From Tubulanus polymorphus (lineage: Eukaryota > Animalia > Nemertea), in contig NC_134031.1 in assembly GCF_964204645.1 (NCBI RefSeq), positions 1,116,001 through 1,180,000 of the forward strand: a DNA stretch of 64,000 nt. Direction: 5' to 3'. Made by a program: the position numbers and the translations under genes. A model generated the notes under the pieces. That model saw only the letters and a program-made list of their open reading frames with translations. It had not been told where the DNA came from and did no database searches. Below, one piece after another: positions 4,901-22,900 of this stretch (position 1 is the first letter of the stretch; every line of letters begins with the position of its first letter).

Positions 4901-7900
4901 GGGGCATGTAAACCTATCACGTTGATTGACAGGTGGTTCAGCCCCGCCTCTTATTGGATTGGACGAATCAAGGTGGATTATTTTCTTTTTTCGGTGGTAA
5001 CCATCATATAACCTGAAACTTTCCTTCGCTTGATTTTTTAAATCTACGTTTTAAGCTTTTTCAACAACGATATTTGTGCATCTTGTTATTATTTCCTTTT
5101 CCATATAGCTATAAATCAGATGGGTAAGTTTGTCCAATGTCATCGTGCCATTGTGTTCGACCAGTTCACAGCAGTCTTTAGCTTATCCCAGACTAATCCT
5201 GAATGAACTAAAGATGTGATGATAATTCAGTAATTTGATCATCATTTAGAACAAGAGATTCATTAGTATAGTGCAGAAGGATAAGGCACTGCTTTGAATA
5301 ATGCTCAGTTACAACTCCACACTCACTCACACACACACATGAGGTCTCACACTAACATTCGATTCATTGATCCTTCCCTTCTATACACATCATATTACAT
5401 TCAATTCATCCTGATGATATTGAAGAAGATGAGAGTTTGATTTAGCGCAAAAAGAGGATAGAAAATTGATAGAATTCACTAGATGTATTTGTAAAGAACA
5501 CTTGAATGAATAATGTTTCACTAAGATGGGCTGTTGTAAATTGAAAAGAAAACTTGTGTTTAGTCGTTTAGAATTGTGCCATTGTCTCTGCGGTGAAATA
5601 CTATTCATTTTGTTTTTAGATGTTCTTAAATCTTTCAGTAAAAATTCAGTATTTAGATGAATGAACAATGACTTTGAAGATAGCGTTCTCGTAATTAAGC
5701 TACACCTACACTACCCACTGTTGGGTAGTTTTAAATCCTTTTAACTTCTAGTACTACAGAGATCCTGACCCAAATCACCCTACAAGCAATACGCCTAAGG
5801 GCAGTTAAAAAAAAACAACTTTTCACTACCTTCATTCAAAATGACTGCTAACCTTAACCCTAGCTCGTTGCCAACCCTAGCACTAGCTCACCCATCACCC
5901 ATAACCCTGTTCCTAACCCTAGGTGGCATTTCTGGGACTTGAACCCGAGACCTCCTACACGCTGGGCCAGCATGCCAACCATTAGACCACCAAGTCATGG
6001 TGATTGGAAGAGTTTGGTGGTTTGCCTTGAATGAGATGAGTGACCAGTCAATGGTGATCAGTCAGGTGTGGTTTTGACTGATCGTCAAAGGTTCTATTCA
6101 CTAACAATACCTCTGATTACAAGAAATGACCCATTGCCAGCAATTTCTATTCTAACAAAGGCAATTATCCACTAGTTAAGCAAACTCATCTTTTAGAAAA
6201 ACTAAAACATAAAAAGATACAAAATCATATTATAACCTCAAAACAATAATTTTGCTAGATTTCGCAAACAATCCTTCAAGAACGACTATTTTGCCAATTC
6301 AATCGACCATATTTTGTACAGATGATAGCATGACACTGTTTGAAAATTAGTTTTGGTGAACAGAAGTTTGGCTACTGGGGGCTTTGGTCCTGAGCAAAAT
6401 TTAGTTGAATGTAATCCTTACAGTGCAGAAGAATGGTGTTGATAATGCATCCATGTATGATTTTACTTACTGATAAACAATCTTTGTCTCCAAATAAGTA
6501 AAGGGTATAGATCAAGCTAGTCTCGGGATCAGTTGCGACGAGTACTCGATGCATGTAGACTTAGCTTAGAATGGTACCGGTATAGGAAGCATGTTTACCG
6601 GAATCTGACTGTGAATTCTGAGCAGGAGAAAATGTTTGTCAGTTTCTGCATGTGTTTCAAAACAGAAAAAAGTGGGGAAAATGCTGGTTTTGATGTGAGG
6701 AGAATTTTTAATGATTTGTAACTAAATGTGATTCATACATTAAGATCTTGTACTTAACCCAGTTAAACATTTATATCAAACATCGGTCAAATACAATCTA
6801 TTTTTCAAAACTTATTCCAAAATTAAGAATAACAGTCATTCAACTATTCAACTGGTCAAATATTTCAGGTATTTATGATTGAATCAGTTTTGATGAACTA
6901 CTGTTTAAGAGACTGATCAATTCCCAACCTAGAACTGGATCCTGTATTAACACAATTTTTTATCTTGCAGTTCTAGTTTGCACGCTGTATTTTCTGTGTT
7001 CACGTATTGATAGATTCCGTATTTTCTTTTATTATTTCAGTGGCAGCACTTCAAACAACGGAGCCACCAAGAATTTAAACATGATCAAATCATTGAGGGT
7101 ACTGAGAGTGCTTCGACCGCTGAAAACTATCAATCGCGTGCCAAAACTCAAGGTCAGAATCTACTTTTCAATTTATATCTTCAATTACGTTATAAACATG
7201 TATGTTTTGAGATGATTTTTTTTATTCAAAGAGATTTTTGTCATAGTTTTAACTAATCAGTAAAAGTTTACTCATCACATCATTTCGATGAAGGTAAGAA
7301 ACCAGTTCCTTGATTCTTGGTTAAGTTTGACTCTAAAGAGTTAAAGGGTTAATGAAGCCCCTCATCAATGTATACTGTACGATACTGAAATCAGTTCAGT
7401 TTCAATGTTTTAAACTCTCTTTGAGTTGAACATTAATCGGGAAGTTTGGAACTGGATGTTTCTACAGTAGTATCTATTTACCCCGGAGTGGATTGCCTCG
7501 GATTATAATGTACCCCGCTTGACAATGTATTCAAAAATGTCCTTCCTCCGATTCTATCCCCGCTCCAACTGCCCGGAATTTACTTATTAACTCACAGAGA
7601 ATTTATTTGTCCCGCGAAATCCGAGGCAAACTGTAACTCGCTGTTCGACGAATTCGATCATTTTTCCAACAGAAAAAAAAGAAGTTGAAAGCTCTTTTTT
7701 TTTTTACAGCTTCACGTCGATGGCTCGGTATTGACTGATACGTTGAATGTTTGTTTGAATTTCAGGCAGTTTTCGATTGCGTAGTGAATTCCGTAAAACG
7801 AGTCACGTCGATACTCGTTGTCTATTCTCTGTTCCAATTAATTTTCGCGGTTGTCGCCGTTCAGCTTTTCAACGGCAAATTTTTCTACTGTACAGATATG

Positions 7901-10900
7901 TCCAAAACGACCGCAGAGGAATGTCAGTAAGTCATGCTGCGGTGATAACTGATGGAGCATGACTAGAAATAAAACTCTCCTCCGTCCGGACCACATGTAG
8001 TCATCCAACGATGTATATATATATATATATTTTATATGTATAATTCGATGTAAAGCTCGGTTCTCGCTATAGATTTGTGTTGATGAATCGCTTACTGTTT
8101 TCGCCGCTCTGAAAAATTTAACTTAACGATTTGAATTCTCAAATTTAACTCGTACCTGTAGTAACTGTTCAGCCACAATTTGTATCGCATCTTAAGGAAA
8201 TATTAGATTTTTAAACTTTAAACTAACGCCTGTTTAGGTCCCGATGAATCTAACTTACAGCAGTATATAATTGGTATGTAACGCTAAAACAAGTCCAATA
8301 ATTTGAATTTTGCAATTTTGATTTATTGATAAGATCGTTTAGTAACATATTCTGACTTGTTAATTGCATTGAACTCTAAGACTCGATCACTTTCTGAATC
8401 ATCATTTCCAGTAACTGCCTAAAAATAAATCAACCTGAAAAAATCAGCAGAGAAAAAACATCTTCACTAGACCTGAACAATAGGGTTGTAAGATAAATGC
8501 ACAATTGCAGTAATTAAAATCATTGCATATAAACCAATAAATTTGTTGTTAGTGAGTTGATGAATCTATATTGAGAATACAGCTGTGATCCTCTAATTCT
8601 AGAATCTATAGTGAGAATACAGCTGTGATCCTCTAATTCTAGAATCTCAGTTGATTTATTATTTTTATTCCCGTTAGTTCCTGTAGTAGAATACATGTAT
8701 TCGATGATTATCATTACGAACCACTGATTGTTTCCTGTTATTAGTTTTAAAATACATCGATGTCATTGATTATTAGGTGGTAAAAAGCTTCTTCGACTGC
8801 AATCGGATACAAACATTCATGAAACGCATATTAGAACTAATAAAATGCAGTGGTATTTATAATTCGTTTCAGTATCCGAGCTGTTAAAATAGACTTTTTT
8901 TTCTGTTTTTATTATTTTTACCGAGTGTTCAGATTTGCATGTCATCTGCCTACTAATTATAACTAGCAACTGGTACAAACGTAATCATTTACAGATTAAA
9001 TTGTTACTCATTCCGGGAAAAGGTGCAACTCTGCTACAATCCAATGGGGTCCAGACAATCCTGCCTCAATGTTGACGAACCCATTAAACGATTCTTGATT
9101 GACCTATGAAAATGAATTGCACAATTTGCTACAGAATCGGGCATTTGATTTACATGCGTATGTTATGTATCTATGTACATGCATATTTTATGTATTTGTG
9201 TACATGCATTTGTTATGTATTTGTGTACATGCATATGTTATGTATATTTGCATATGCATAAGCTCTTCCTCAGAAGAATGTCTTTGTGCCTAATTTTCCA
9301 CCAAAAAAATATTTTGAGCCTCAGAACGATCTGGTCACTGTCCTCATCTGTTTTAAGATGCAGCTGTAATTGCTGTGAGTGTCGTCTGTGTGTGATTACG
9401 ATTGTAAAAGTTGATGATGTTTTTGCCTGGTGGAGGTTGATACACTTTGCTTTCAGGTTGTCTCCTGCGACCTACGACGCCTGCCCGCGTGTCCGCGTGC
9501 GTCTCATACTGTGCACTGATAACTGTCTTTATGTTAAAACAACAACAAAAAATTACTTTTCATGTCCTGGCCGTATCTGCGGACAACCTTCTCGATCGAG
9601 AGATCAAATAGCGCGAGATTAGAGCGATATTTCTCTTATACAATTTTGTTGTTTCTTGTCTAATTTCAGGCTGTATTTCAATGCCTTATCAATTCAGTAA
9701 AGAATGTACTGAACATCATGGTAGTTTACATGCTGTTCCAGTTTATTTTTGCTGTTATCGCGGTCCAGTTGTTCGAAGGCAAATTCTTTTATTGTACTGA
9801 CCAATCAAAAGACACCGAAGAACAGTGTCAGTAAGTGTGGTTACTATGGTGACAGATTTCGCAAGATTTTCGGCTCATGAAAAAAGCTTCGATTAATTTT
9901 TTTTTTTTTTTCTTTAATGTTCGACATTGAAAATTTTTACCGATTATCCTCTCGTTTTCGCAATGTGATTCTTCACACAACTAGTTAAAAATGTGGCTTT
10001 GAATTTCTTTGTGCAGTCCGTCGCTTGCTCAACCCTTTCAAATTTCTATCGTATCATTATTACTTCGTGATTTTTAAAGAATATTGATTTTTGTCTGAAA
10101 CGAAAATACGTGAAAATCTACCCACTAAATCCACAGTTCTCTAAACTCTATACAGTTAATTAACTCTCCTATCATCACTGCTTTAAACACAGTCTAATTC
10201 TTACAGTTTGTTCACCGACAATTTTTATCAGCTTCTTCAAATGATATCGTACACCCCAGTAATATAGAATCCATGCACACTAAGAATAAACAGAGTCCAG
10301 GATGTTTACCTCGGTACTTGTGCTAGTATTTATTTACCCTTTTAACAACATCTTTATAGTCTTCTAGAAGTCTCTTTGTTCTAGATTATAAATGTGTCTT
10401 GTATTGCTGATAACTATTAGGATATAGTCGAAATGTTTAGTAAACTACAGCTCAAGGAATCATTCCGCTCCCTTTCTTAATGTGTTGGATTTTATATCAT
10501 CATTACAAAACGGACTCGCAGATTCTTCAAATTATCTTTAGAAGAACTATGTATGCTCTACATAACACCCTCGACTTCATGTATTTCAAATAATTGAGGA
10601 TGAATTATCCCCTTATTTTGGCGATAACTGCATCTCTTACACTACGAGGACTTGTTCATTATTTCTGTACCTCTGTTTCTAAGCGATGCAGGTCATCCTC
10701 CTCCTTAAGATATTCATAATTCATTCATTCATGTTTGGAACGCACAGCCACATTTCCATCAAAACAACTCGGCCTTCGTACAGTCTGTGAACATTGTACC
10801 AGTGACAAAACGATCTCGGCTTAGTTAAGTTTGTATGCATGGATATCTAGTTATATATGTGTACGGTCCGTGTTTTAGCTTTATCCCCCCTCACCCATGT

Positions 10901-13900
10901 AGAGTCAATGTTTCGCATGCATTCGGCCAAACAAATATTATTCAACACCGCTTCAAAAAACGCTTTTATTGTAACTTAGATCCATCAAACTTAAAATAAT
11001 GATCGCATAAAATCGCTCTTTCTAATTTTTTCGTTTGTTTGCGACTGTTTTTACGGAGCACGAATTGTTATTTTTAGGGGGCAGTATTTCGTGTATGAAG
11101 ATAATTCCGATACGCCGAAAGTGGAAGATCGCATGTGGAAAAGTCAAGATTTCAACTACGATCACGTTGGTTTAGCTTTGCTTACGTTATTCACTGTAAC
11201 GACAGGAGAAGGTTGGCCACAGTAAGTACATGTGTGACACTGGAGTTATCAAGACTGCGTTTGTCACCGAGCAGATTTCCCCTGGATTATCATGTACGTG
11301 CCCCTGACTCTGCTTGCCATAGAGACAACTGTCTCTGATTATCACGTGCCCCTGACTCTGCTTGCCATAGAGACAACTGTCTCTGATTATCACGTGCCCC
11401 TGACTCTACTTGCCATAGAGACAACTGTCTCTGATTATCACGTACCCCTGACTCTTCTTGCCATAGAGACAACTGTCTCTGATTATCACGTACCCCTGAC
11501 TCTGCTTGCCATAGAGACAACTGTCTCTGATTATCACGTGCCCCTGACTCTGCTTGCCATAGAGACAACTGTCTCTGATTATCATGTACCCCTGACTCTG
11601 CTTGCCGTAGAGACAACTGTCTCTGATTATCACGTGCCCCTGACTCTACTTGCCATAGAGACAACTGTCTCTGATTATTACGTACCCCTGACTCTTCTTG
11701 CCATAGAGACAACTGTCTCTGATTATCACGTACCCCTGACTCTGCTTGCCATAGAGACAACTGTCTCTGATTATCACGTGCCCCTGACTCTGCTTGCCAT
11801 AGAGACAACTGTCTCTGATTATCACGTACCCCTGACTCTGCTTGCCGTAGAGACAACTGTCTCTGATAATCACGTACCCCTGACTCTGCTTGCCATAGAG
11901 ACAACTGTCTCTGATTATCACGTACCCCTGACTCTGCTTGCCATAGAGACAACTGTCTCTGATAATCACGTGCCCCTGACTCTGCTTGCCATAGAGACAA
12001 CTGTCTCTGATTATCACGTAACCCTGACTCTGCTTGCCATAGAGACAACTGTCTCTGATTATCATGTACCCCTGACTCTGCTTGCCGTAGAGACAACTGT
12101 CTCTGATAATCACGTACCCCTGACTCTGCTTGCCATAGAGACAACTGTCTCTGATTATTACGTACCCCTGACTCTGCTTGCCACAGGGCTGAATTGCCTT
12201 GGATTATCACATGCCCTACATGACAAAATGTTAGAAATTGAATGTTAAGAATTCTCCCCCTATCCGTCGTCGCTCTGATTGCTCCAGATTTCACTCGTCT
12301 GGAAGAACATTCGTTAGTCCCAAGCGGAGTCTACTATATCTATGGATATGTCATCATGTGTTTGTATGATTATAGGGTTCTACAGCATTCGATGGATGCC
12401 ACTGAGAAGGATCAAGGACCGTCGCCCGGAGCTGCTATGCAGATGGCTATTTTCTATATCGTGTTTTTCATCGTGTTTCCGTTTTTCTTTGTGAATATAT
12501 TCGTTGCGTTGATCATCATCACATTCCAAGAACAAGGAGAAAATGAACTGATCGATCAGGACTTGGATAAAAATCAGGTTTGAAAGGAAACTTGCTTCTC
12601 GAAATCAAACGGCAGCTTGTCTCGGAATCAGAGTTAGCGCTGACAACTCATCTCAAGCTCACAACCCACGTCTGCCAATTTAACTGATGATCTTATTTTC
12701 TTTTAATCATTTTTCAGAAACAATGTATCGATTTTGCGATAAACGCGCGACCACTTTGTCGATATATGCCTAAAAACAAAGATTCGTTGAAATATCGAAT
12801 CTGGCGTCTGGTTGTATCAGCTCCGTTTGAGTATTTCATCATGACTATGATCGCTCTCAATACACTTATACTTATGATGAAGGTAAGTTTTAACCATTTA
12901 TTTGGTTCTCGAAGAAAAGATTGGATTTCAAATCTAGGGCCAAAAATTCCCGGACCCAGTTCCACGATTATTGGTAAGTTTGAATACAGTTCATTTCTTA
13001 TGTAGCTCTGTTGAACTGGGTCCGGTCTTGTAGTTATGGGTAACAGAAACAATTGAACCTGTTTTCGTGAATGTTCGACTGTAATACGCTACAGAGCCCG
13101 GTTTTATGAAAAAGTTTGAACTTACAACGATCGAGTTTGAAATGTTGAAAAACTGAAGTTACCAATGGCAATTTGACAAAAATAAAATTTAGTTACAATT
13201 TTTCATGAAACTGGATCCTGAACTAGGAACAGTCTATATAGTTCAATAGCTTCAGTACTGATTCTGTATATCACAGGATAGTTTTGTGAAATTAACAAAT
13301 TGTCTCTTTCAGTGCTTATAAAGTGTATATTTGTGTAAAATGACCATCAGTGCAGACGAAACCTGAGTTATAGTGAGCTAGATTATATTCAGGGTTCTTC
13401 AACCACTAATTTAGTTGTTAATTAATATAGCGGTCAAATTTGTATCACATAATTGATGAAATTCATGTCCGATTCGAGTATACAGGGCCTTGTTTCATAG
13501 AGGGTATCAAAGTGACCTGTAGGTGTAAATCCTCAATCTGGCCTTGGTTTCAAAGACTGGGTATCAAAGTTTCCCCTTGGGATAAATCTTCAACCCAGGC
13601 CAGAGAAACCATGGTAATACTGGAGAAATTTCAAAACGTTCCCAGGGATTATTTTACCTTCATATCTGTGAAACTCGGCTCTGGTTGTTACTATTATGTG
13701 GTGCATATTTGTCAAATTCGACAGTTTTAAAATGATTATATAGCGACCATGATCTCATGTTATTGTCATAATTTTGAAGCTAGTTGAACCGAAAGTTTCC
13801 GATCAAAAGTTGTAAGTTCAGAAAGATCATTCTACTGAAGAAAGCTCATGGTCGCTACATGTGATTTGACTTAACATTTTTATAATTTGATGAATTAACG

Positions 13901-16900
13901 ATGATTAAATGATTAATTTCAATGAGTTGATTATGAAATCTGATGACGAGGAGCACGGAATTATTTCAACAGCTTACAAAGCAATTTTACACTTTCCTAA
14001 AAAGAGCAAGTCCATGAACACGCAGATAGGTAGTACACAGAATGTTAACACAATTTTATCAGAAAAAATTATGAGCTTTTGCTACTATTGCATATAATAG
14101 CCTTATTTCTTCATGAACTATACTCATTTATTGATGAAGCTCGTGATTTCTAACCTATAAAGTACTACCAGCCTTCATGTTTATCAATTTGACACCAGGT
14201 GAACACAGCTCGCCTACAACTACTCAAAAACAGCAAAACATCGCAATACATTCAGTCAATCTTCTGAATTCTGCTGTTTGCTTGTAAGCTGTTGATCTAT
14301 TATTCCATCACTGCCTTAAATCAACCCTGTACACGATAGATTCGTCCTCATTAATTGTTGGGTAGTTTAAAGTTTAAAGCCCCCCGGCACCTGGAGCTTC
14401 TGGTTTACCCCTCTCACTAAGTGATATGCGTCCTGCCTTCTCTGATGAAACCGTGTGTCTGTATTTCAATAGCAAACGTCTGTATACGACTACCACCAGT
14501 TCTTACAATTTCATCGGCGATGAAAAAATCGGCAAATTTTGCTGTTAAATTATGGCCAAAATTAAACGAATCATTCAGAAAACTTTTTAAAGTTGATTGA
14601 ATGCTATATTGGGTAGTCGTGCGATCAGCGATGCACAATCTTTCTGGGAAACATTGTTCATCGCTCGAGGCTATTGTGAATGTGAGTGCTTTTTTGCCTT
14701 TTAATGTCGTAATGCCTTGGAGTTTACGTATATGTATTCAGTATATTATGTATGTATTGTTTGTTAAATCAATGATGTAAATTTGATGATATACATCTCC
14801 AAATGATGTATGTTTGATGATATACATCCCAAAATGATGTATTTTTGATGATACACATCCCAAAATGATGTATGTTTGATGATATACATCCCAAAATGAT
14901 GTATGTTTGATGATATGCATCCCAAAGTGATGTATTTTCAATGACTTACATCACAAAATGATGTATGTTTGATTATATGCATCCCAAAGTGATGTATTTT
15001 CAATGACTTACATCACAAAATGATGTATGTTAGATGACTTACATCCCTTACTTTTGAAAAATACATGGACCGTAATCAGAAGCATGTGTAACAGTTATCA
15101 TTTAATTTGCATTTAATTTCTATATGTGATTAAATCTATGAATCTACTTTGGTTTTAAAAACAAAATCTATCTGGCACTTATTTCTTGTCTCCTGCCATA
15201 TTACATCAGTGAAATACTGGTTGCATAGCTGTGTGGTTGGGAATAGTTGAATATTTGAAATGAAACTAATTCAAATATGAAGAACTCGAGATTGTAACTA
15301 CCTGGTCCCTGAAGCATTTTATTTCGATATTATCGACGGAGACAAGAAATTCTTCTTATGCATGAAACTATGTGTTATTTAGTTTTCAAAGTGAAACAAA
15401 TTTTGACCAATTCAATTACTGCGTTGAGATCTAGAATCAGTTTCTATAAAAATGCTGTGGGTATCACGTGTACTTTAAGCATTTGTAAAATTCACTTGAA
15501 TTGGTGTATGTATCTATTATGTTGTTTTTGTGTTGAAGTTTGGATTCTGAGTTAAGCGGTTTTAAAGCGAGGATTCGATTAGATAAGACAGTAAGGTCTA
15601 TATATAACGATTCATAATCCAAACTCGTAGATTTTTAAACCTTTGTCTTGTCCTGTTATTTTAAGTGTCTTTTTATTTGGTGGCGGCCAATATAAACATT
15701 GTTGGAAAGTGATTGATATTTCTATTAATGTCTGTTCTTATATCGATATATTTTACATGTATATATTCAATGTGTATATTTCATCACATCTCATTAACGG
15801 TATCGTCATCTCAGTACATGTTGACAAAGAACTGCAGTATTCATTGTTTGAAACATATAAAACTAATCCTAGACATTTGTTTAAAGCATATATATATATA
15901 TATATATCTGCTACAATCAACAGAGCTGAAGAGCTTGCCAGGTTTTTCTGCGCATATGTGCTTCAGGGCATGCACCGGGCCCTTGGGCAGGCACCAGGCT
16001 CTTGGGCATACTTCTTGATACTACTAGTATCTGAATTGTCGTCAAATGCAGTCAATAGTTCTCATTTAAAGTCATCATGTACTTGAGGAGTTGTGTACTA
16101 TCATAATCATTGACTCATCGTCTCAAGATCGTTGACATTTTCTCTCAATTTCCTAACAACATTTCATCATTTAACCGGATAGAAGCAGCTCTTGTAAAAT
16201 TCAGGAAGTTTTCTTCGAATTTTAATCACTCATTTTTAAGATTAATGTGAGTTTTATGTGAATTTCAAACTTACTGATCAGTGAAAAATCTCCTTTTTGT
16301 CTTTCTTTGCAAACCTTCCAAAGATTTCAAGAAAGTCCCCTTATTCTATTTCAGTGCTATGAAAATATGTTGCAATTTTAATGGGTTGAATTCACCTACA
16401 TATGATACTATACTTGCCTATATTTTAGTTACTCAGGGTAAAAATGTTTCAATTTCTTTCTACCACGATGTTAAGGACCACGGACCAAAGATTGATATCT
16501 AAGTAGCTCTAGTGAACAATCAGGGATGGGGGCGACCTTTACTTGTATCCCAATTCCACCCTCTTCTAAATCAAATCTCGAGCCATGAATTTCTGACGAT
16601 CAGTACGTTTGAAATTGTATATTCATGTATGATTGTGGTGGAGGGATTGTTACGTATTTACTGGTGATGGTTAAATGTTTTTATAAATGAGGTACAGTGC
16701 GAGTGGTGAGTGTTAGCGATGAGTGGATGCCCAGTACCGGTAGTGATAGGATATTTTGGCCCCACCTGTCTTCAATGTCCCCACTGTATGCGTTGCTCCC
16801 AACCAGTCAGTAGTCTATTTACCATTTCACGTTATGTAATGATTTTTTGAACTATGTTGTCACTCTATACATGTAAATTACTTGTTATTATTGTCTATTT

Positions 16901-19900
16901 TCAAACCTTTATAGTTCTATGGTTCGAGTATTCAATACAGAGAAGTGCTGAAAAACCTAAACACCGCATTCACCGTACTTTTTACGATTGAGTGTATATT
17001 GAAGCTTATGGCCTTTGGAATTAGGGTAAGCCTGCGTCCGTACGCAAACACGACAACACAAAACAGCGTCTAGAGGGTTAGACCTAGTGTGAACAGAACG
17101 TGGCAGATACTCGTGTAGACGCGCACAACAACTACAACTACAAAATGTTCTTCGTTTTAGAAAATTTGTCGTTTTCACTATTTGTAGTACACAACAACAA
17201 CTCCATCCATCGATGTGGTCCAATTCTCAAAGCATTTTCGTGGAAGAGCTTATAGTCACGCCACATGTAGCCGTGGGTACTGCTGTACATGGTGTCACGC
17301 CATGGTGCAGTGGGTACTGCCGTACATGGTGTCACACCATATTACAGTTGGTACTCTCATTCTGCTTAATGTGGTATGACTCTAAGATTATAAATCTGTT
17401 CTATGCATTGTTCACTATAAGGTCAACCGTTCGGCTCCAACTAACCTTCTATTTTGATTTCTACCTCCCGGGGTGCCTTGAGATTTAGCATGTGGTTTTG
17501 GTGGCTCCTCATGCCCTATTGCTTCTCCGTGGTTTAGGGTTTAGTCGGTTGTTGGTCTCTTTCCTCGGGTGCAGGGTTTTCTATATTTAGCACCACTAAC
17601 TATGTTATTATCAGTGTTTATTCGGTTATTTTTTTACAAATCAAATGAACTGACAGCTTCTGATTCTGTAGTCGGAAGTTTTCAGTTACGATGGCCGCGT
17701 GAATGATTAGAAATGATGAACTATTGTACATTTTGCTGATCTCTGAAACTTTCATAATGCCTGGAGTTTGTTTCACCATCGATTCTGTACACAGTTTATA
17801 TATAGATAACTTCTGGTCTTAAGTCACAACTGTGCAACTGGAGCCTTCAGTCTAAAATCGTGGTTCTGATACAGGCTCCAGGTTCAAAGTTTCCTTACAT
17901 GATAATGATTTATGCAGTAATTCTAAAACTGCTACCACTACTGCTGCTGCTGCTACCACTGCTGCTGCTGCATCTGCGAGAGTTCATCAATTTCAGTTCA
18001 TGCGGTCATCGTTTCAATCTCGCACAGATAAACGGTTAAAGCATCTTTATCATTATTTTTCTTTTCTTTCCGTCACATGCTTCAGCACCATCAAGACCCC
18101 GCTACTAAGGACCATGCAAAATTTGAACGATACACTTTGGCCTTAGCGTATTTGAATATTGCATTCACGATTATGTTTACGATCGAATGCACCCTGAAGC
18201 TCATTGCGTTTGGACTACGGGTATGACCAGACTATCGAAGCAACAATTTACAGATATATAAATATTCATATATTTATATATATTTTTTTATGCCTTCAAT
18301 TCGACGACAGTTTTGAAATGATCGACGCGGTTTCAAAGTTGGCGAGCGGCCATTTCAAAAATTAGTCTCGTAGAAGGCATGAATTTGATGAAGCATACTA
18401 GATCACGTGTGACAATTGAAAGTTGTCTGTTATTGAAATCTTGCGTTTCAACATTCTGTTTGTCTCGTCGTCTCAATATCTCGGCTTTTTGATCTGAAGA
18501 ACGTGTGACATTTTACTGAATCGCTGCTGGACACAATTTATACACAATTCACTGATGATGAATTATCAGCATACCTTTTGATATTATTGTACTGTGAAAA
18601 GTGCTTTTGAAATGGCAGTGATACAGTCAAACTTGCACAAGTCATCATGAGATAAGTCGTCCTGAATAACTGAACTCATCTTAGTTTGAGTCCTAAGCCC
18701 CACCCCTTCCAATTCAATTTACTACTAAGTGTAATCAGTACGATGATCGTCCCAACTTCCACGACTTAAGCAGCGAGTTTGACTTAATTACTGGAAAAGT
18801 ACTGTGTCATATCTTATTGAATGCGTTTTCACATCATTTCATCGATATTAGAATGTTCTTCGCTGTCCACTAATTCCTACGTAATACCCGCCGCGACAAT
18901 TCTTCAATTTGAATGATGTTCTGAGTTCTTGGTCAAATTGCCGTCGTATACAGAAATTCTTACAATCTACTGCATGCTCAATGAGGAGTGTGATATCATA
19001 TAATAATCAAAACTATCTCCCGGAAATATCACTGTTAGCAATATCATTACACTCTTCTCTACTTCGTCTTTGTGAATGTTCTCTCTTTCTCTCTTCCAAT
19101 TCATTCAGTTCCATTTCTCGGCATGTAGTATATGCTCTTCCTGCGAAGATGGCCGCCTCGTTACTTCTCCCTATTACATCATCGTGATTAATATCTGGTT
19201 TTGATTGTGATGTCATATACAGAGGCAGCCTTCGTTTCTAGAAGGGTTTATAGTTTGTATTATGTATATATTACTAACTGCTATGAAAACCTTCAGACTT
19301 TGAAATAATGGAATGGAATTGTTAATTCTGCTAAGCTTTGGATAATGAAAGGAAATTCGATTGATTACTAGTTTCCTCAGCATGTGTCTCTTACATAGCC
19401 AGTAAAAAAACTCATAAGGAATATATCATAACCTGCTTTAGTATATGGCTGTCTGATTTTTGCATGTTTTAATTCTGGATTCTTGCTGTGGTCCATCGAA
19501 AAGTTCTAGTGGAAATCATTGTGGGCTCCATGAATATCTAAATCCCGCACGGACACAATTTCCACCGGGAACATAACTCTATCTGCATGCTAAGCCTTCT
19601 ACTACTAATATCGTATTATTTTCCTGTTAGGAATCCATTTCAAAATGGTTCAGGGTTATATCAGATTGAAATAAACACATTTTGAGCTCAAAAATATGCA
19701 TTATTCATCAGGCATTCAAATTAGAAAATAAAAACAAATGAAATATTTTTTTCTTTATTATATATTTATGCCTTCTGTTCCATTCTAATGTGTATATTGA
19801 TATGTTTGCGCAAACTTTGATTCATTTCCAACTGTTTGTTCTATATTTACTGGTGAAGGGTATTTCATATATCATACATATATCTTTCTTATTGTAGTTA

Positions 19901-22900
19901 TTACAAAGGTCTTTAACCATTTTTTCTGACCTTTGCCTTTTTTGACCACAATAATATCCCAACGTTCAAGGTCGATTTGTAATCCATAAACTGACAAACA
20001 AACAGAATGTTGTCCACTGATGTCCAACGTAATAGATTTGTCCATACCTTAACAAAAAAAACGTATGGAAAAGCAGCTTTTGGACGCCCATGTAAGCTTG
20101 TACATTGCATGTGTGATTAAAGTATACAATTTCATCAATAAACATGAAAAGCAACCCTTCAGTCCACATTTCGGTAAAAGTGATGGAACTAATAATAGCT
20201 TTCTACCATTTTGAAATGATCCTTCTCCGAGCACGCTTTTAAATGTGAAGTTGTTATTAAAACACGTTTGAATAACGGCATCGATCTGATCTTTTCGGTC
20301 ATAACATTTCCAATTGTTTGACTCAAAAGATCTCTATTAAACATAACTAAAAAGAATTCTAAAATCTCTTACGAAATTCTCTAAATAAATTCAGTATATC
20401 TTGAGTGAAAGGTGCATGTTCTAAGAGGCAAATAAGTATTTCCCGGGCATTTTCTTGATAAATAAAGAATCACTTGTAAAATGCTTGGTGATGTGTTGTA
20501 AGAGATTGGTATTTAGTATTGTTTGTAAAGAGTTTTATTATTATCTTCCATGTTTTATGTATTTCCTCCTCTATCTCCTCAACCTTCCCTGTCTGTTTTT
20601 GAAAATCACATCGTAATGTGCTGAACAATAATAGTACAATTTGCAAATTGAATGGCTTAGCAAAAATAAGTTAACGTCATAATAAAAGATGATAATTTCG
20701 ATGAATATGTAGAATTGTGAATCAAGCTTTTTCTGAAGTAATTGATGCTTATTCAAAGTTAAAACGAATCAAAAGCATGTGAACTACTGGATGTTTACCC
20801 ATCATGAACATTCAGACATCAAGAACCTTCAATGATAATGATATATTTTGTCATTATGTGGGAAAATCCAAAAATTCAAATCTGACGCAGTTCCTAACTT
20901 TATCTGGTATTTATAGATGACAATTCCTGTTAGATGCAAAGTCATTTGGTAGCAAAGTCATTTTCTATGAAAGAAATTTACGGGCTAATAATATCTTCGT
21001 CATGTTAGATATATGACCTTGCATCTATCCTTCCTTCTATTGGGTTCAATCCTGGATAAAAAAGTTGTTTTTTTTTCGAATAAGGTCTTTTCGATATTCT
21101 TTTTGTCTAAATGTTTGTGATGTGTCGACTACCAGTGTAAAAGCATGAAATTGATTACTGAGTAAATTTGCCGCTAATAATCGTCGATTCTGATCGGTGT
21201 CGTTCGGTGTACGTCGTAACTCACAGATGTTTTGTTCGTTTTTTTTCTTCTAGAACTATTTCAGAGATCCGTGGAACATCTTCGATTTCATCACGGTTAT
21301 CGGCAGTATAACGGATGTACTCGTCACCGAACTTCAGGTTAGTCAAAATATGCAGATACGGCTGCTTTACTACTCGACAAATTATTGTGTGTTCCGTTGA
21401 CAAAAAAGCGATCACCAATCGTGACAATTTATTTGTAACGAATGCTTTCTATTTCAGGTGGGATATCTAATAAATGATTTAAAATTATTCGTAGTAATGA
21501 TTAAATATGACTAAAATCTGAATATCAGAAAGTTGTTTCTACTAGAAAAATATTTGGAATTTTAAAAAAAAAACCAATAAGTAAAATAACGTTTTGGAAT
21601 AATTTCATAGAAATAAGTATAATTAATATTTTATTGATCATATTTTTAAAATTTTTACTTTTTTATACATCCTTTTATAAAATGCTTTTGATTATTATTA
21701 GACTTTTTCTCTCATCTTTTGAGAAATAATCATTATTTGATTATTTGGAATATTTTTGGGGCTCGAGGTTTAAAATTCAGTAATTTTTCAGATTCGCGAT
21801 TTTTGCCATTTGCCATGGCTATACTGCTGTTATGGCTTCATATTTGATACAAATTTCACTCATCACCGCTTGATAATATCTACATATATATATTTATATA
21901 TTTACATCAGGGTATCATCTTATTATGCAATAGTTTAAAATCGGAAAAAAAGTTCTGTCAATCTCAAAATGAATTTTTAGCTTAGAACTGAACATGATTT
22001 TTTCTAGCTTTTGAAATTGTTTACCTTTTATTCTATTTTCTATCTACAGACAAACAATTTAGTATGACTGCTGTTTATTTAATTCATCCTTCACGATTCA
22101 TAGAGAAAAATAACAGTAAACTCCTTCCATGTTTTAGTTGAAGTTCAAATGAACATTCCATTGCAATAAAGATTGAATTGAATTGACCAGCTTGATTGAT
22201 TGGCACAAAGTGGGCGGAGTCTACGTAAAATAGCTTCCACAGAAAGCGATTAAACAATTATAACAATTAGAATATTTCAATAAGATAAATTAGTCAACCA
22301 CGAACCACTTAAATTAAGTAGTTTAATAAAATCTGTGACTAATACTTTTCAAGTACCCAGTTCCACAGTTATGAGTTAATATTTGATTCAGAGTTGGCTC
22401 ATTGAAAGTGATCCAATTACGGTTAACTCAGTAACTGGAACTGGATGCAATATAATTGACTACAGAAATCACTATCACTTAGAATATGCATGCATTAGGC
22501 GAATGATAACACTTTAAAAAACAGTCGAGCTTCCTTAGCTGTATCCAATCAGTGTGTATCTTTAAATCATGAGTCGAAGGAGAAACTTTTCTGGAAACTT
22601 TTGGTGTTTTTATACTGAAGTGTGTGACGGGTGTGAGAGCGTGGAGTTATACAGCTGTTTGATCTAAATATACTATAACAAAAAGACTAATTTTATTTGT
22701 TGATGAATTTGTAACATGTGTTCATACAATGTATTATTATTATTATTATTATTATAATGCGTACTATTTGAATAAGAAACAACTAATACCAGCTTCGATG
22801 TTGTAATAAGCACCTTGATTTCAGTGAATACCTCAGACTGATCATCGAATACTTATTATTTCCGAACTGATTTTTGAAAATTCCCGTGAAATTGTCTTTT

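What the first reader, a model, noticed from the sequence alone, without database searches (positions are those of the whole stretch)
16915..18220. Second mutually exclusive pair: IVS1-S2 loop plus IVS2, differing by 8 residues
Seen: two paralogous phase-0 exons (111 and 135 nt), both ending LNxAFTxxFTIECxLKLxAFGxR. Variant B has a longer His/charge-rich extracellular loop ([16 protein letters not shown]). Both preserve frame, so NMD cannot enforce exclusivity, yet including both would add an extra helix. Active exclusion is therefore implied. The three histidines could confer pH or Zn/Ni sensitivity (inference).
Basis: partly seen in the sequence, partly recalled or inferred. Interest (0 to 1): 0.8.

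Follow-up and report, generated by a model that had tools for sequence, protein, structure and literature searches.

The report
Alternative IVS2 exon pair in Cav2
A ribbon worm's presynaptic-type calcium channel gene has two side-by-side copies of the exon for one helix of its fourth voltage sensor, most likely used one at a time; the same arrangement is already published for molluscs, so this extends a known design to a new phylum.

Summary
Exon A (16915-17025, 37 aa) and exon B (18086-18220, 45 aa) are homologous phase-0 exons with AG/GT borders. They lie between the IVS1 and IVS3 exons of the single Cav2 gene of Tubulanus polymorphus. Synonymous sites between them are saturated while dN is 0.15-0.25, so the duplication is old and both copies have been kept under selection.

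The arrangement is not new. Dunn et al. 2018 (PMC5818475) report a mutually exclusive exon pair at IVS2 in Aplysia CaV2, with counterparts in Crassostrea and Octopus. Here, 137 of 138 mollusc isoform models carry exactly one form, short or long loop. Tandem pairs also occur in an unidentified animal (L001), in Lingula (three exons) and in arthropods. Exon A fits the canonical short class. Exon B fits a spiralian long-loop class that includes Lineus and flatworms.

Not shown: use of exon B in Tubulanus RNA. No RNA run was available, and the only annotated protein uses exon A. No docking/selector RNA pairing beats shuffled controls. The three histidines are not conserved, so the pH/metal idea has no support.

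The scan had not noted this pair before; it had noted other exon pairs in the same gene.

Verdict: new member of a known kind, of moderate interest.

The parts
12718..12882 (+). Constitutive upstream exon: III-IV linker end and IVS1 (..[32 protein letters not shown]), ending in phase 0
   Evidence: 100% match to residues 1247-1302 of the annotated Tubulanus protein P0360. Donor is AAG|gtaagt.
12883..16914 (+). Intron of 4032 nt upstream of exon A
   Evidence: DNA contigs of runs X1-X3 cover it without joints. No docking-type pairing above chance.
16915..17025 (+). Exon A, 111 nt / 37 aa: canonical short IVS1-S2 loop plus IVS2. This is the form in the annotated protein.
   Evidence: Exact match to residues 1303-1339 of XP_074655928.1. 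Fits the canonical short-class profile best, 76.9 vs 61.7 bits.
17026..18085 (+). Intron of 1060 nt between the two alternative exons. Too long for steric exclusion. Holds a 37-nt tandem repeat (17273-17355) and a CTG-rich tract (17929-17971).
18086..18220 (+). Exon B, 135 nt / 45 aa: long, His- and charge-rich IVS1-S2 loop plus IVS2. Not annotated.
   Evidence: Absent from P0360. Fits the spiralian long-loop class profile best, 68.4 vs 57.9 bits. pS about 1.0 and dN 0.15-0.25 against exon A.
18221..21253 (+). Intron of 3033 nt downstream of exon B
   Evidence: No docking-type pairing above chance.
21254..21337 (+). Constitutive downstream exon: IVS3 ([28 protein letters not shown]), starting in phase 0
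   Evidence: 100% match to residues 1340-1367 of P0360. Pfam Ion_trans profile positions 62-85.

Best explanation
Exons A and B are an old tandem duplicate of the exon that encodes the extracellular IVS1-S2 loop and the S2 helix of the fourth voltage-sensing domain. They sit in the single Cav2 (presynaptic-type) calcium channel gene of the ribbon worm Tubulanus polymorphus. Each mature mRNA most likely takes exactly one of them, which gives two channel versions. One has the canonical short loop (A, the annotated form). The other has an 8-residue longer, charged loop and six mostly conservative S2 substitutions, including Ile to Thr two residues after the conserved S2 Glu (B). Shown here: homology of the two exons, intact splice signals and frame, long-term purifying selection on both copies, conservation of the S2 residues N, F, E and K, and the same tandem arrangement with one-or-the-other usage in annotated isoforms of relatives. 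Inferred: that exon B is spliced in Tubulanus, that the choice is exclusive and cell-type regulated, and that the functional effect is a shift in voltage-sensor IV behaviour or in its extracellular interactions. How exclusion is enforced is unknown. RNA pairing was not detected, so regulation by trans-acting splicing factors (as PTB does for CaV1.2 exons 8/8a) combined with loss of misassembled double- or zero-exon protein is my best guess.
For: Sequence and splice anatomy. Pfam Ion_trans S2 region in both exons. pS about 1.0, third-position identity 35%, dN 0.15-0.25. Only these two copies exist in this gene and genome. Gene and organism identity: exact exon matches to XP_074655928.1 'voltage-dependent calcium channel type A subunit alpha-1-like [Tubulanus polymorphus]'. 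[quoted passage not shown] Mollusc isoform models: 106 long, 31 short, 1 both, 0 neither. The same exon order, short then long, appears in the Pinctada and Ylistrum models that contain both. An independent tandem pair with clean AG/GT phase-0 borders lies 400 nt apart in loci L001-L004. Reciprocal profile fit: A to the canonical short class, B to the long-loop class that holds Lineus, the Lingula 3rd exon, the L001 2nd exon and flatworm forms. That class is supported in the exon tree at 87/81, inner node 95/81.
Against: There is no RNA evidence for exon B or for exclusivity in Tubulanus. All three available runs are DNA, and the only annotated model uses A. Many arthropod gene models, and single Pinctada, Ylistrum and Lingula models, string two or three S2 exons together, so either annotation is unreliable at this site or double inclusion occurs. 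Orthology of A and B to particular mollusc exons is unresolved. B's S2 is closest to mollusc short forms (65-71% identity), the tree backbone is a polytomy, and a Tubulanus-specific A+B clade is not rejected (p-AU 0.23, run on the earlier alignment that was shifted by one residue for the mollusc short forms). No enforcing RNA structure was found.
Confidence: 0.7

Rival explanations
1. Exon B is a relic. It is no longer (or only negligibly) spliced in Tubulanus, which uses exon A constitutively.
For: The only annotated Tubulanus protein has A and not B. No RNA run holds the locus. Lineages appear to differ in their default form: all 15 listed Lineus isoforms use the long-loop type, so loss of one partner is plausible.
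Against: Exon B has an intact 45-codon frame, a strong pyrimidine tract (0.83), an AG acceptor and a GT donor. All S2 key residues are retained. Synonymous sites are saturated against a low dN, which means selection acted on B for most of the time since the duplication. No differences in exon B were seen in the second data set, although about 1.5 would be expected over both exons, so this is weak.
Confidence: 0.15
2. The pair is alternative but not strictly exclusive. In-frame transcripts with both exons (or neither) are made at meaningful levels and act as non-conducting or dominant-negative products, as described for CaV1.2 e21+22 (IIIS2).
For: Double inclusion and double skipping are both in frame with no stop. 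No structural or NMD safeguard was found. At least 17 arthropod models, plus single models from Pinctada, Ylistrum and Lingula, contain tandem S2 exons. There is a vertebrate precedent for double inclusion of an S2 exon pair (PMC5059693, abstract seen).
Against: 137 of 138 mollusc isoform models have exactly one exon. The models with several exons include ab-initio and partial predictions. A domain with two S2 helices cannot form a normal 6-TM repeat (established channel topology).
Confidence: 0.1
3. One reading: the His-rich loop of exon B makes the channel sensitive to extracellular pH or to Zn/Ni.
For: Three His lie within the first 10 residues of an extracellular loop. His residues in extracellular voltage-sensor loops do form metal sites in CaV2.3 and CaV3.2 (own knowledge).
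Against: In related long-loop exons (Lineus, L001, L005, Lingula, flatworms, fragments) only the second-position His recurs, and it is also common in short forms. His-1 and His-10 are unique to Tubulanus. Mollusc long loops vary freely in length (44-59 aa) and sequence. The known metal sites are in domain I, not domain IV.
Confidence: 0.05

Closest known systems
Mutually exclusive IVS2 exon pair of mollusc CaV2 alpha1 (Aplysia; also Crassostrea and Octopus), Dunn et al. 2018, Sci Rep 8:3263 (PMC5818475)
   Same: Same gene family (single invertebrate Cav2). Same position (IVS1-S2 loop plus IVS2, between the IVS1 and IVS3 exons). Two homologous exons, one with a short and one with a longer loop, short exon first. 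Annotated isoforms carry one or the other.
   Different: Different phylum (Nemertea). One-to-one orthology of the exons is unresolved. Mollusc short forms are one residue shorter at the C-terminal end (GFGK) and mollusc long loops are much longer (44-59 aa). Exon B fits another long-loop class (Lineus, Lingula, flatworms) better. Usage in RNA is untested in Tubulanus.
Vertebrate CaV1.2 exons 21/22 (IIIS2), including the e21+22 double-inclusion variant (PMC5059693)
   Same: A homologous, frame-preserving exon pair that encodes an S2 helix of a voltage-sensing domain in a four-domain calcium channel. Double inclusion is in frame, so NMD gives no protection.
   Different: Different channel subfamily (Cav1), different domain (III rather than IV) and an independent duplication. 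In CaV1.2 the double-inclusion product is documented; here nothing is known about it.
Drosophila cacophony IS4A/IS4B and I-IIA/I-IIB mutually exclusive pairs (PMC11828482)
   Same: The single invertebrate Cav2 gene is diversified by mutually exclusive exons, one pair of them in a voltage sensor, with isoform-specific gating and localisation shown in the fly.
   Different: Different sites. That paper states that cac has only two mutually exclusive sites, neither in domain IV. The Drosophila protein seen here has a single IVS2 form, while many other arthropod models show a second IVS2 exon.
Docking-site/selector controlled exon clusters (Dscam, 14-3-3 xi, Mhc type)
   Same: Tandem homologous exons, of which one is expected per mRNA.
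   Different: No intron element pairing with sequences next to both exons was found above shuffled controls, in Tubulanus or in L001.

Membership tests
Protostome Cav2 alternative IVS2 exon pair (as published for molluscs) | The host gene is a Cav2-type alpha1 subunit | tested here: met
   Exons match XP_074655928.1, type A subunit alpha-1-like, of Tubulanus polymorphus. The nearest full-length relatives are Cav2 proteins of Lineus, Owenia, Lingula and molluscs.
Protostome Cav2 alternative IVS2 exon pair (as published for molluscs) | Two tandem homologous exons between the IVS1 exon and the IVS3 exon, each encoding the S1-S2 loop plus S2 | tested here: met
Protostome Cav2 alternative IVS2 exon pair (as published for molluscs) | Both exons are spliceable and interchangeable (AG/GT borders, same phase, frame kept with either) | tested here: met
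Protostome Cav2 alternative IVS2 exon pair (as published for molluscs) | One canonical short-loop exon followed by one longer-loop exon | tested here: met
   37 aa then 45 aa. The same order appears in Pinctada and Ylistrum models and in L001 (39 then 42 aa).
Protostome Cav2 alternative IVS2 exon pair (as published for molluscs) | Mature transcripts contain exactly one of the two | not testable with these tools
   Only DNA runs were found. No spliced joints appear in the read-laying output. The single annotated model uses A.
Protostome Cav2 alternative IVS2 exon pair (as published for molluscs) | Each exon is orthologous to one mollusc counterpart (a single ancestral duplication) | tested here: inconclusive
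   The tree backbone is unresolved. The A+B clade is not rejected, p-AU 0.23. Identities cross-match between forms. Profiles place A in the canonical class and B in a non-mollusc long-loop class.
Exon clusters governed by competing RNA structures (docking site plus selectors) | One intron element is complementary to a sequence next to each alternative exon, better than chance | tested here: not met
   Ungapped stem scan with 100 dinucleotide-preserving shuffles: the observed score was reached by 15-100 of 100 shuffles in both geometries, in Tubulanus and in L001. Intron-exon pairings are at chance or marginal. Gapped or more distant structures were not excluded.
Extracellular histidine metal/proton sites of CaV2.3 and CaV3.2 | Conserved His residues in extracellular voltage-sensor loops that coordinate Zn/Ni/Cu | tested here: not met
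   His-1 and His-10 of exon B are not found in any related long-loop exon. The known sites lie in domain I (own knowledge). Metal binding itself cannot be tested here.

The most novel reading that the evidence does not exclude
The IVS2 exon duplication is not a mollusc peculiarity. It is an ancient splice module, spiralian-wide and possibly protostome-wide, with at least two exon classes: a canonical short-loop class and a long-loop class with an aromatic-x-x-Tyr motif. Lineages then differ in which exon is the default. The Tubulanus annotation uses the short one. Lineus and flatworm models use the long one. Lingula keeps three exons, and arthropods keep a separate pair. Tubulanus exon B would be a live member of the long-loop class that tunes voltage sensor IV of the only presynaptic calcium channel.
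Probability: 0.35. Interest if true: 0.5.

Novelty: new member of a known kind. Interest (0 to 1): 0.33.

Why it matters
Most invertebrates have a single Cav2 gene for fast transmitter release, so alternative exons are their main route to channel diversity. An alternative S2 helix and S1-S2 loop in voltage sensor IV is a compact natural experiment on how that sensor shapes gating. Vertebrates vary the same sensor at the IVS3-S4 linker, which is also where gating-modifier toxins act (own knowledge). The Tubulanus case itself adds only a phylum to a published mollusc observation. The wider pattern seen along the way is not described in the papers I could search, and no functional study of the two forms exists. 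That pattern covers pairs or triplets in nemertean, brachiopod, mollusc, arthropod and an unidentified animal, with lineage-specific defaults. Even so, the finding is incremental and not surprising.

Tried and rejected
1. RNA evidence. The look-up of sequencing runs returned three runs, none on record as RNA. Read laying showed contigs lying over introns with no exon-exon joints, so expression could not be tested. A loose end at 16934 inside exon A in X2/X3 does not fit a splice site. Those contigs carry a common linker-like end (GGTTCGTCCATC, followed by GATC in one case), so I take them for a DNA library. This was not pursued.

2. Word search with exon B alone found nothing. It only sees proteins of 25-79 aa, so the blank is uninformative.

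3. The first exon tree was misaligned for mollusc short forms, which are one residue shorter. It was rebuilt. The AU test used the first alignment, and a second AU test did not finish.

4. Genomic context of the nearest A-like fragments was unusable. P0068 had no DNA held and the P0075 contigs are under 800 bp.

5. Lineus and Owenia gene DNA could not be fetched because the gene ranges are 247 kb and 140 kb. Whether Lineus also holds an A-type exon is therefore unknown, and only 15 of its 33 isoforms were listed.

6. Docking/selector RNA pairing is not better than shuffles. One scan attempt got no answer and another timed out.

7. The inverted repeat 13065-13091 against exon B is at chance level, 25 of 100 shuffles.

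8. Intron 17529-17555 against exon B is marginal (4-5 of 100 shuffles among 18 tests). By duplex energy it ranks only 7th of 349 intron windows.

9. The YGCY cluster upstream of exon B (9 against a background of 1.6 per 200 nt) comes from a CTG microsatellite and is not mirrored in L001 or L005.

10. A possible third exon class (Lingula 2nd exon, L001 1st exon, P0010) is too weak at 44-53% identity. No third exon or remnant lies in the window.

Exons were searched one by one, by reference. Exons were joined only inside a local script to check the reading frame.

Full report
**What is there.** The window's + strand carries the 3' two thirds of a Cav2-type calcium channel alpha1 gene. Mapping the annotated protein XP_074655928.1 ('voltage-dependent calcium channel type A subunit alpha-1-like [Tubulanus polymorphus]', P0360) onto the window places residues ~888-2202 across 1868-55909, with exact exon matches. 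This confirms the organism named in earlier scan notes.

Between the IVS1 exon (12718-12882, ending ..LILMMK) and the IVS3 exon (21254-21337, [12 protein letters not shown]..) lie two homologous exons:
- Exon A, 16915-17025 (37 aa).
- Exon B, 18086-18220 (45 aa).

Both have pyrimidine-rich acceptors, AG/GT borders and phase 0 on both sides. Both hit the S2 part of Pfam Ion_trans. They align at 61% identity over 31 aa (tblastn E = 2.5e-9 within the window). There is no third copy or remnant in the window, and no other close copy in the 268-Mb genome. That includes the arithmetic point that A+B or neither keeps the frame with no stop.

**Age and selection.** Over the 31 alignable codons pS is about 1.0, third-position identity is 35% (near random), and dN is 0.15-0.25. 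The duplication is therefore old, and both copies have been held under purifying selection for most of the time since. The S2 residues that matter for a voltage sensor are identical in both: the Asn of LN, the Phe-Thr-x-x-Phe, the Glu and the Lys. The six S2 differences are conservative except Ile/Thr two residues after the Glu.

**RNA.** The direct test was not possible. The only three runs holding this DNA are not on record as RNA. Their contigs lie over introns and show no exon-exon joints. The single annotated Tubulanus model contains exon A, and IIIS5 exon b, but not exon B. Use of exon B in this species is therefore an inference.

**Already known.** Dunn et al. 2018 (PMC5818475) compared Aplysia CaV2 alpha1 with genome and transcriptome data. 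[quoted passage not shown] This is the same site in the same gene family.

**Comparative evidence gathered here.**
- An exhaustive search with exon B and two region-restricted searches, followed by cluster look-ups, gave isoform sets for many animals.
- In nine mollusc groups, 138 isoform models have a readable IVS1-to-IVS3 segment. Of these, 106 carry a long-loop form (45-59 aa), 31 a short form (36-38 aa), one partial model carries both, and none lacks both.
- The Pinctada and Ylistrum models that contain both show short then long, the order seen in Tubulanus.
- Contigs of an unidentified animal from metagenomes (L001-L004) show IIIS6, IVS1, a 39-aa S2 exon and, 400 nt later, a 42-aa B-like S2 exon, all with AG/GT borders and phase 0.
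- One Lingula model strings three S2 exons together (37+45+43 aa).
- Arthropods from spider to insects have two 37-aa exons. Their 'first' and 'second' types each group across orders in the exon tree.
- Deuterostomes (15 Antedon isoforms, Saccoglossus, Ptychodera, Diadema, vertebrates) show a single 37-aa form.
- All 15 listed isoforms of Lineus longissimus, the other nemertean available, use a 42-aa long-loop form.

**Which exon corresponds to which?** With only ~32 alignable columns the tree backbone is a polytomy. My first tree was also misaligned for the mollusc short forms and was redone. A Tubulanus-specific A+B clade is not rejected (p-AU 0.23, on the earlier alignment). Identities cross-match: B's S2 is closest to mollusc short forms.

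One supported cross-phylum class does emerge (87/81, inner node 95/81). It holds Lineus, the Lingula third exon, the L001 second exon and flatworm Cav2 forms.

A reciprocal profile test that also uses the loop assigns A to the canonical short class (76.9 vs 61.7 bits) and B to this long-loop class (68.4 vs 57.9 bits). B shares an aromatic-x-x-Tyr motif just before L.YLN. I read this as moderate evidence that B belongs to an old spiralian exon class. It is not proof.

**Mechanism of exclusion.**
- Steric hindrance is excluded, because the intervening intron is 1060 nt.
- Splice sites are ordinary GT-AG.
- NMD cannot act, because all combinations are in frame.
- I searched for a docking site pairing with selectors next to both exons, upstream and downstream geometries, in Tubulanus and in L001. 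Nothing exceeded dinucleotide-preserving shuffles.
- The intron/exon-B inverted repeat is at chance level. A marginal intron-2/exon-B pairing is unremarkable by energy rank.
- A CTG-rich tract gives nine YGCY motifs within 200 nt upstream of exon B. It is a microsatellite and is not mirrored in L001 or L005.

The enforcing mechanism is therefore unknown. Trans-acting repressors are the best guess, as PTB acts on CaV1.2 exons 8/8a (PMC3060452, abstract seen). Exclusion may also be imperfect, as with the CaV1.2 e21+22 variant (PMC5059693, abstract seen). The many arthropod models with both exons in tandem remain unexplained. They may be annotation artefacts or real double inclusion.

**Function.** The His/pH/metal idea finds no comparative support. 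Only the second-position His recurs, and it recurs in short forms too. Long loops vary freely in length and sequence among relatives. The most defensible statement is that the pair yields two versions of voltage sensor IV, differing in the extracellular S1-S2 loop and slightly in S2. The consequences for gating or extracellular interactions are untested.

**Verdict.** This is a nemertean member of an exon pair already published for molluscs, so it is a new member of a known kind and of moderate-to-low interest. The broader distribution and the exon classes seen here are a lead worth a comparative study.

Noticed in passing
P0139, P0144, P0146, P0147, P0149, P0151, P0153, P0164, P0169-P0172, P0174, P0225, P0228, P0412, P0428 (arthropod Cav2 proteins): Many arthropod gene models contain two 37-aa IVS2 exons in tandem (74 aa between IVS1 and IVS3). 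Other arthropod models have only the first type (Bombus, Cardiocondyla, Eriocheir, Drosophila) or only the second type (Homarus). This is either widespread mis-annotation or real in-frame double inclusion. I did not find an arthropod IVS2 pair described in the papers searched.
   Followed up: partly
P0489 (Lingula anatina model), segment between IVS1 and IVS3: This model has three tandem S2 exons (37 + 45 + 43 aa). The third belongs to the long-loop class with Lineus and flatworms. The second is very divergent and loosely resembles the first S2 exon of locus L001.
   Followed up: partly
window 7757-7927 and 9664-9831: The annotated Tubulanus protein uses the second IIIS5 exon (96% match at 9664-9831) and not the first (68% at 7757-7927). 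The annotation therefore also omits one member of the other exon pair noted by the scan.
   Followed up: partly
window 17929-17971: A CTG/CTA-rich tract (period 18-21, ~2 copies) lies 115-157 nt upstream of exon B's acceptor and gives nine YGCY motifs against a background of 1.6 per 200 nt. It is not mirrored in L001 or L005 and is probably a microsatellite.
   Followed up: yes
window 11296-12183: A 48-nt tandem repeat with 18.5 copies at 95% identity lies in the intron before the IIIS6 exon. It stays open in one frame for 336 codons but has no coding homology that I looked for.
   Followed up: no
window 14771-15047 and 17273-17355: Further intronic tandem repeats: period 31 with 8.9 copies, and period 37 with 2.2 copies, in the introns flanking exon A.
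   Followed up: no
window 16934 (inside exon A), runs X2 and X3: Contigs of one sample fit the window from 16934 onward but carry 90-165 unlike letters before it. Several contigs of these runs end in a common linker-like sequence. I take this for a DNA library junction or a structural variant, not a splice joint.
   Followed up: no
window 12700-18300, run X1: 33 single-letter differences and one 6-nt insertion (after 13064) separate a second data set from the window. All lie in introns except 12813 (T>C), which is in the IVS1 exon. None lies in exon A or exon B, where about 1.5 would be expected, so this is not significant.
   Followed up: partly
L005:6549-7922: In another unidentified animal the first S2 exon after IVS1 is already of the long-loop type (43 aa, YHPNQKNDEFFEDY..). 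The contig ends 590 nt later, so a partner exon could not be looked for.
   Followed up: partly
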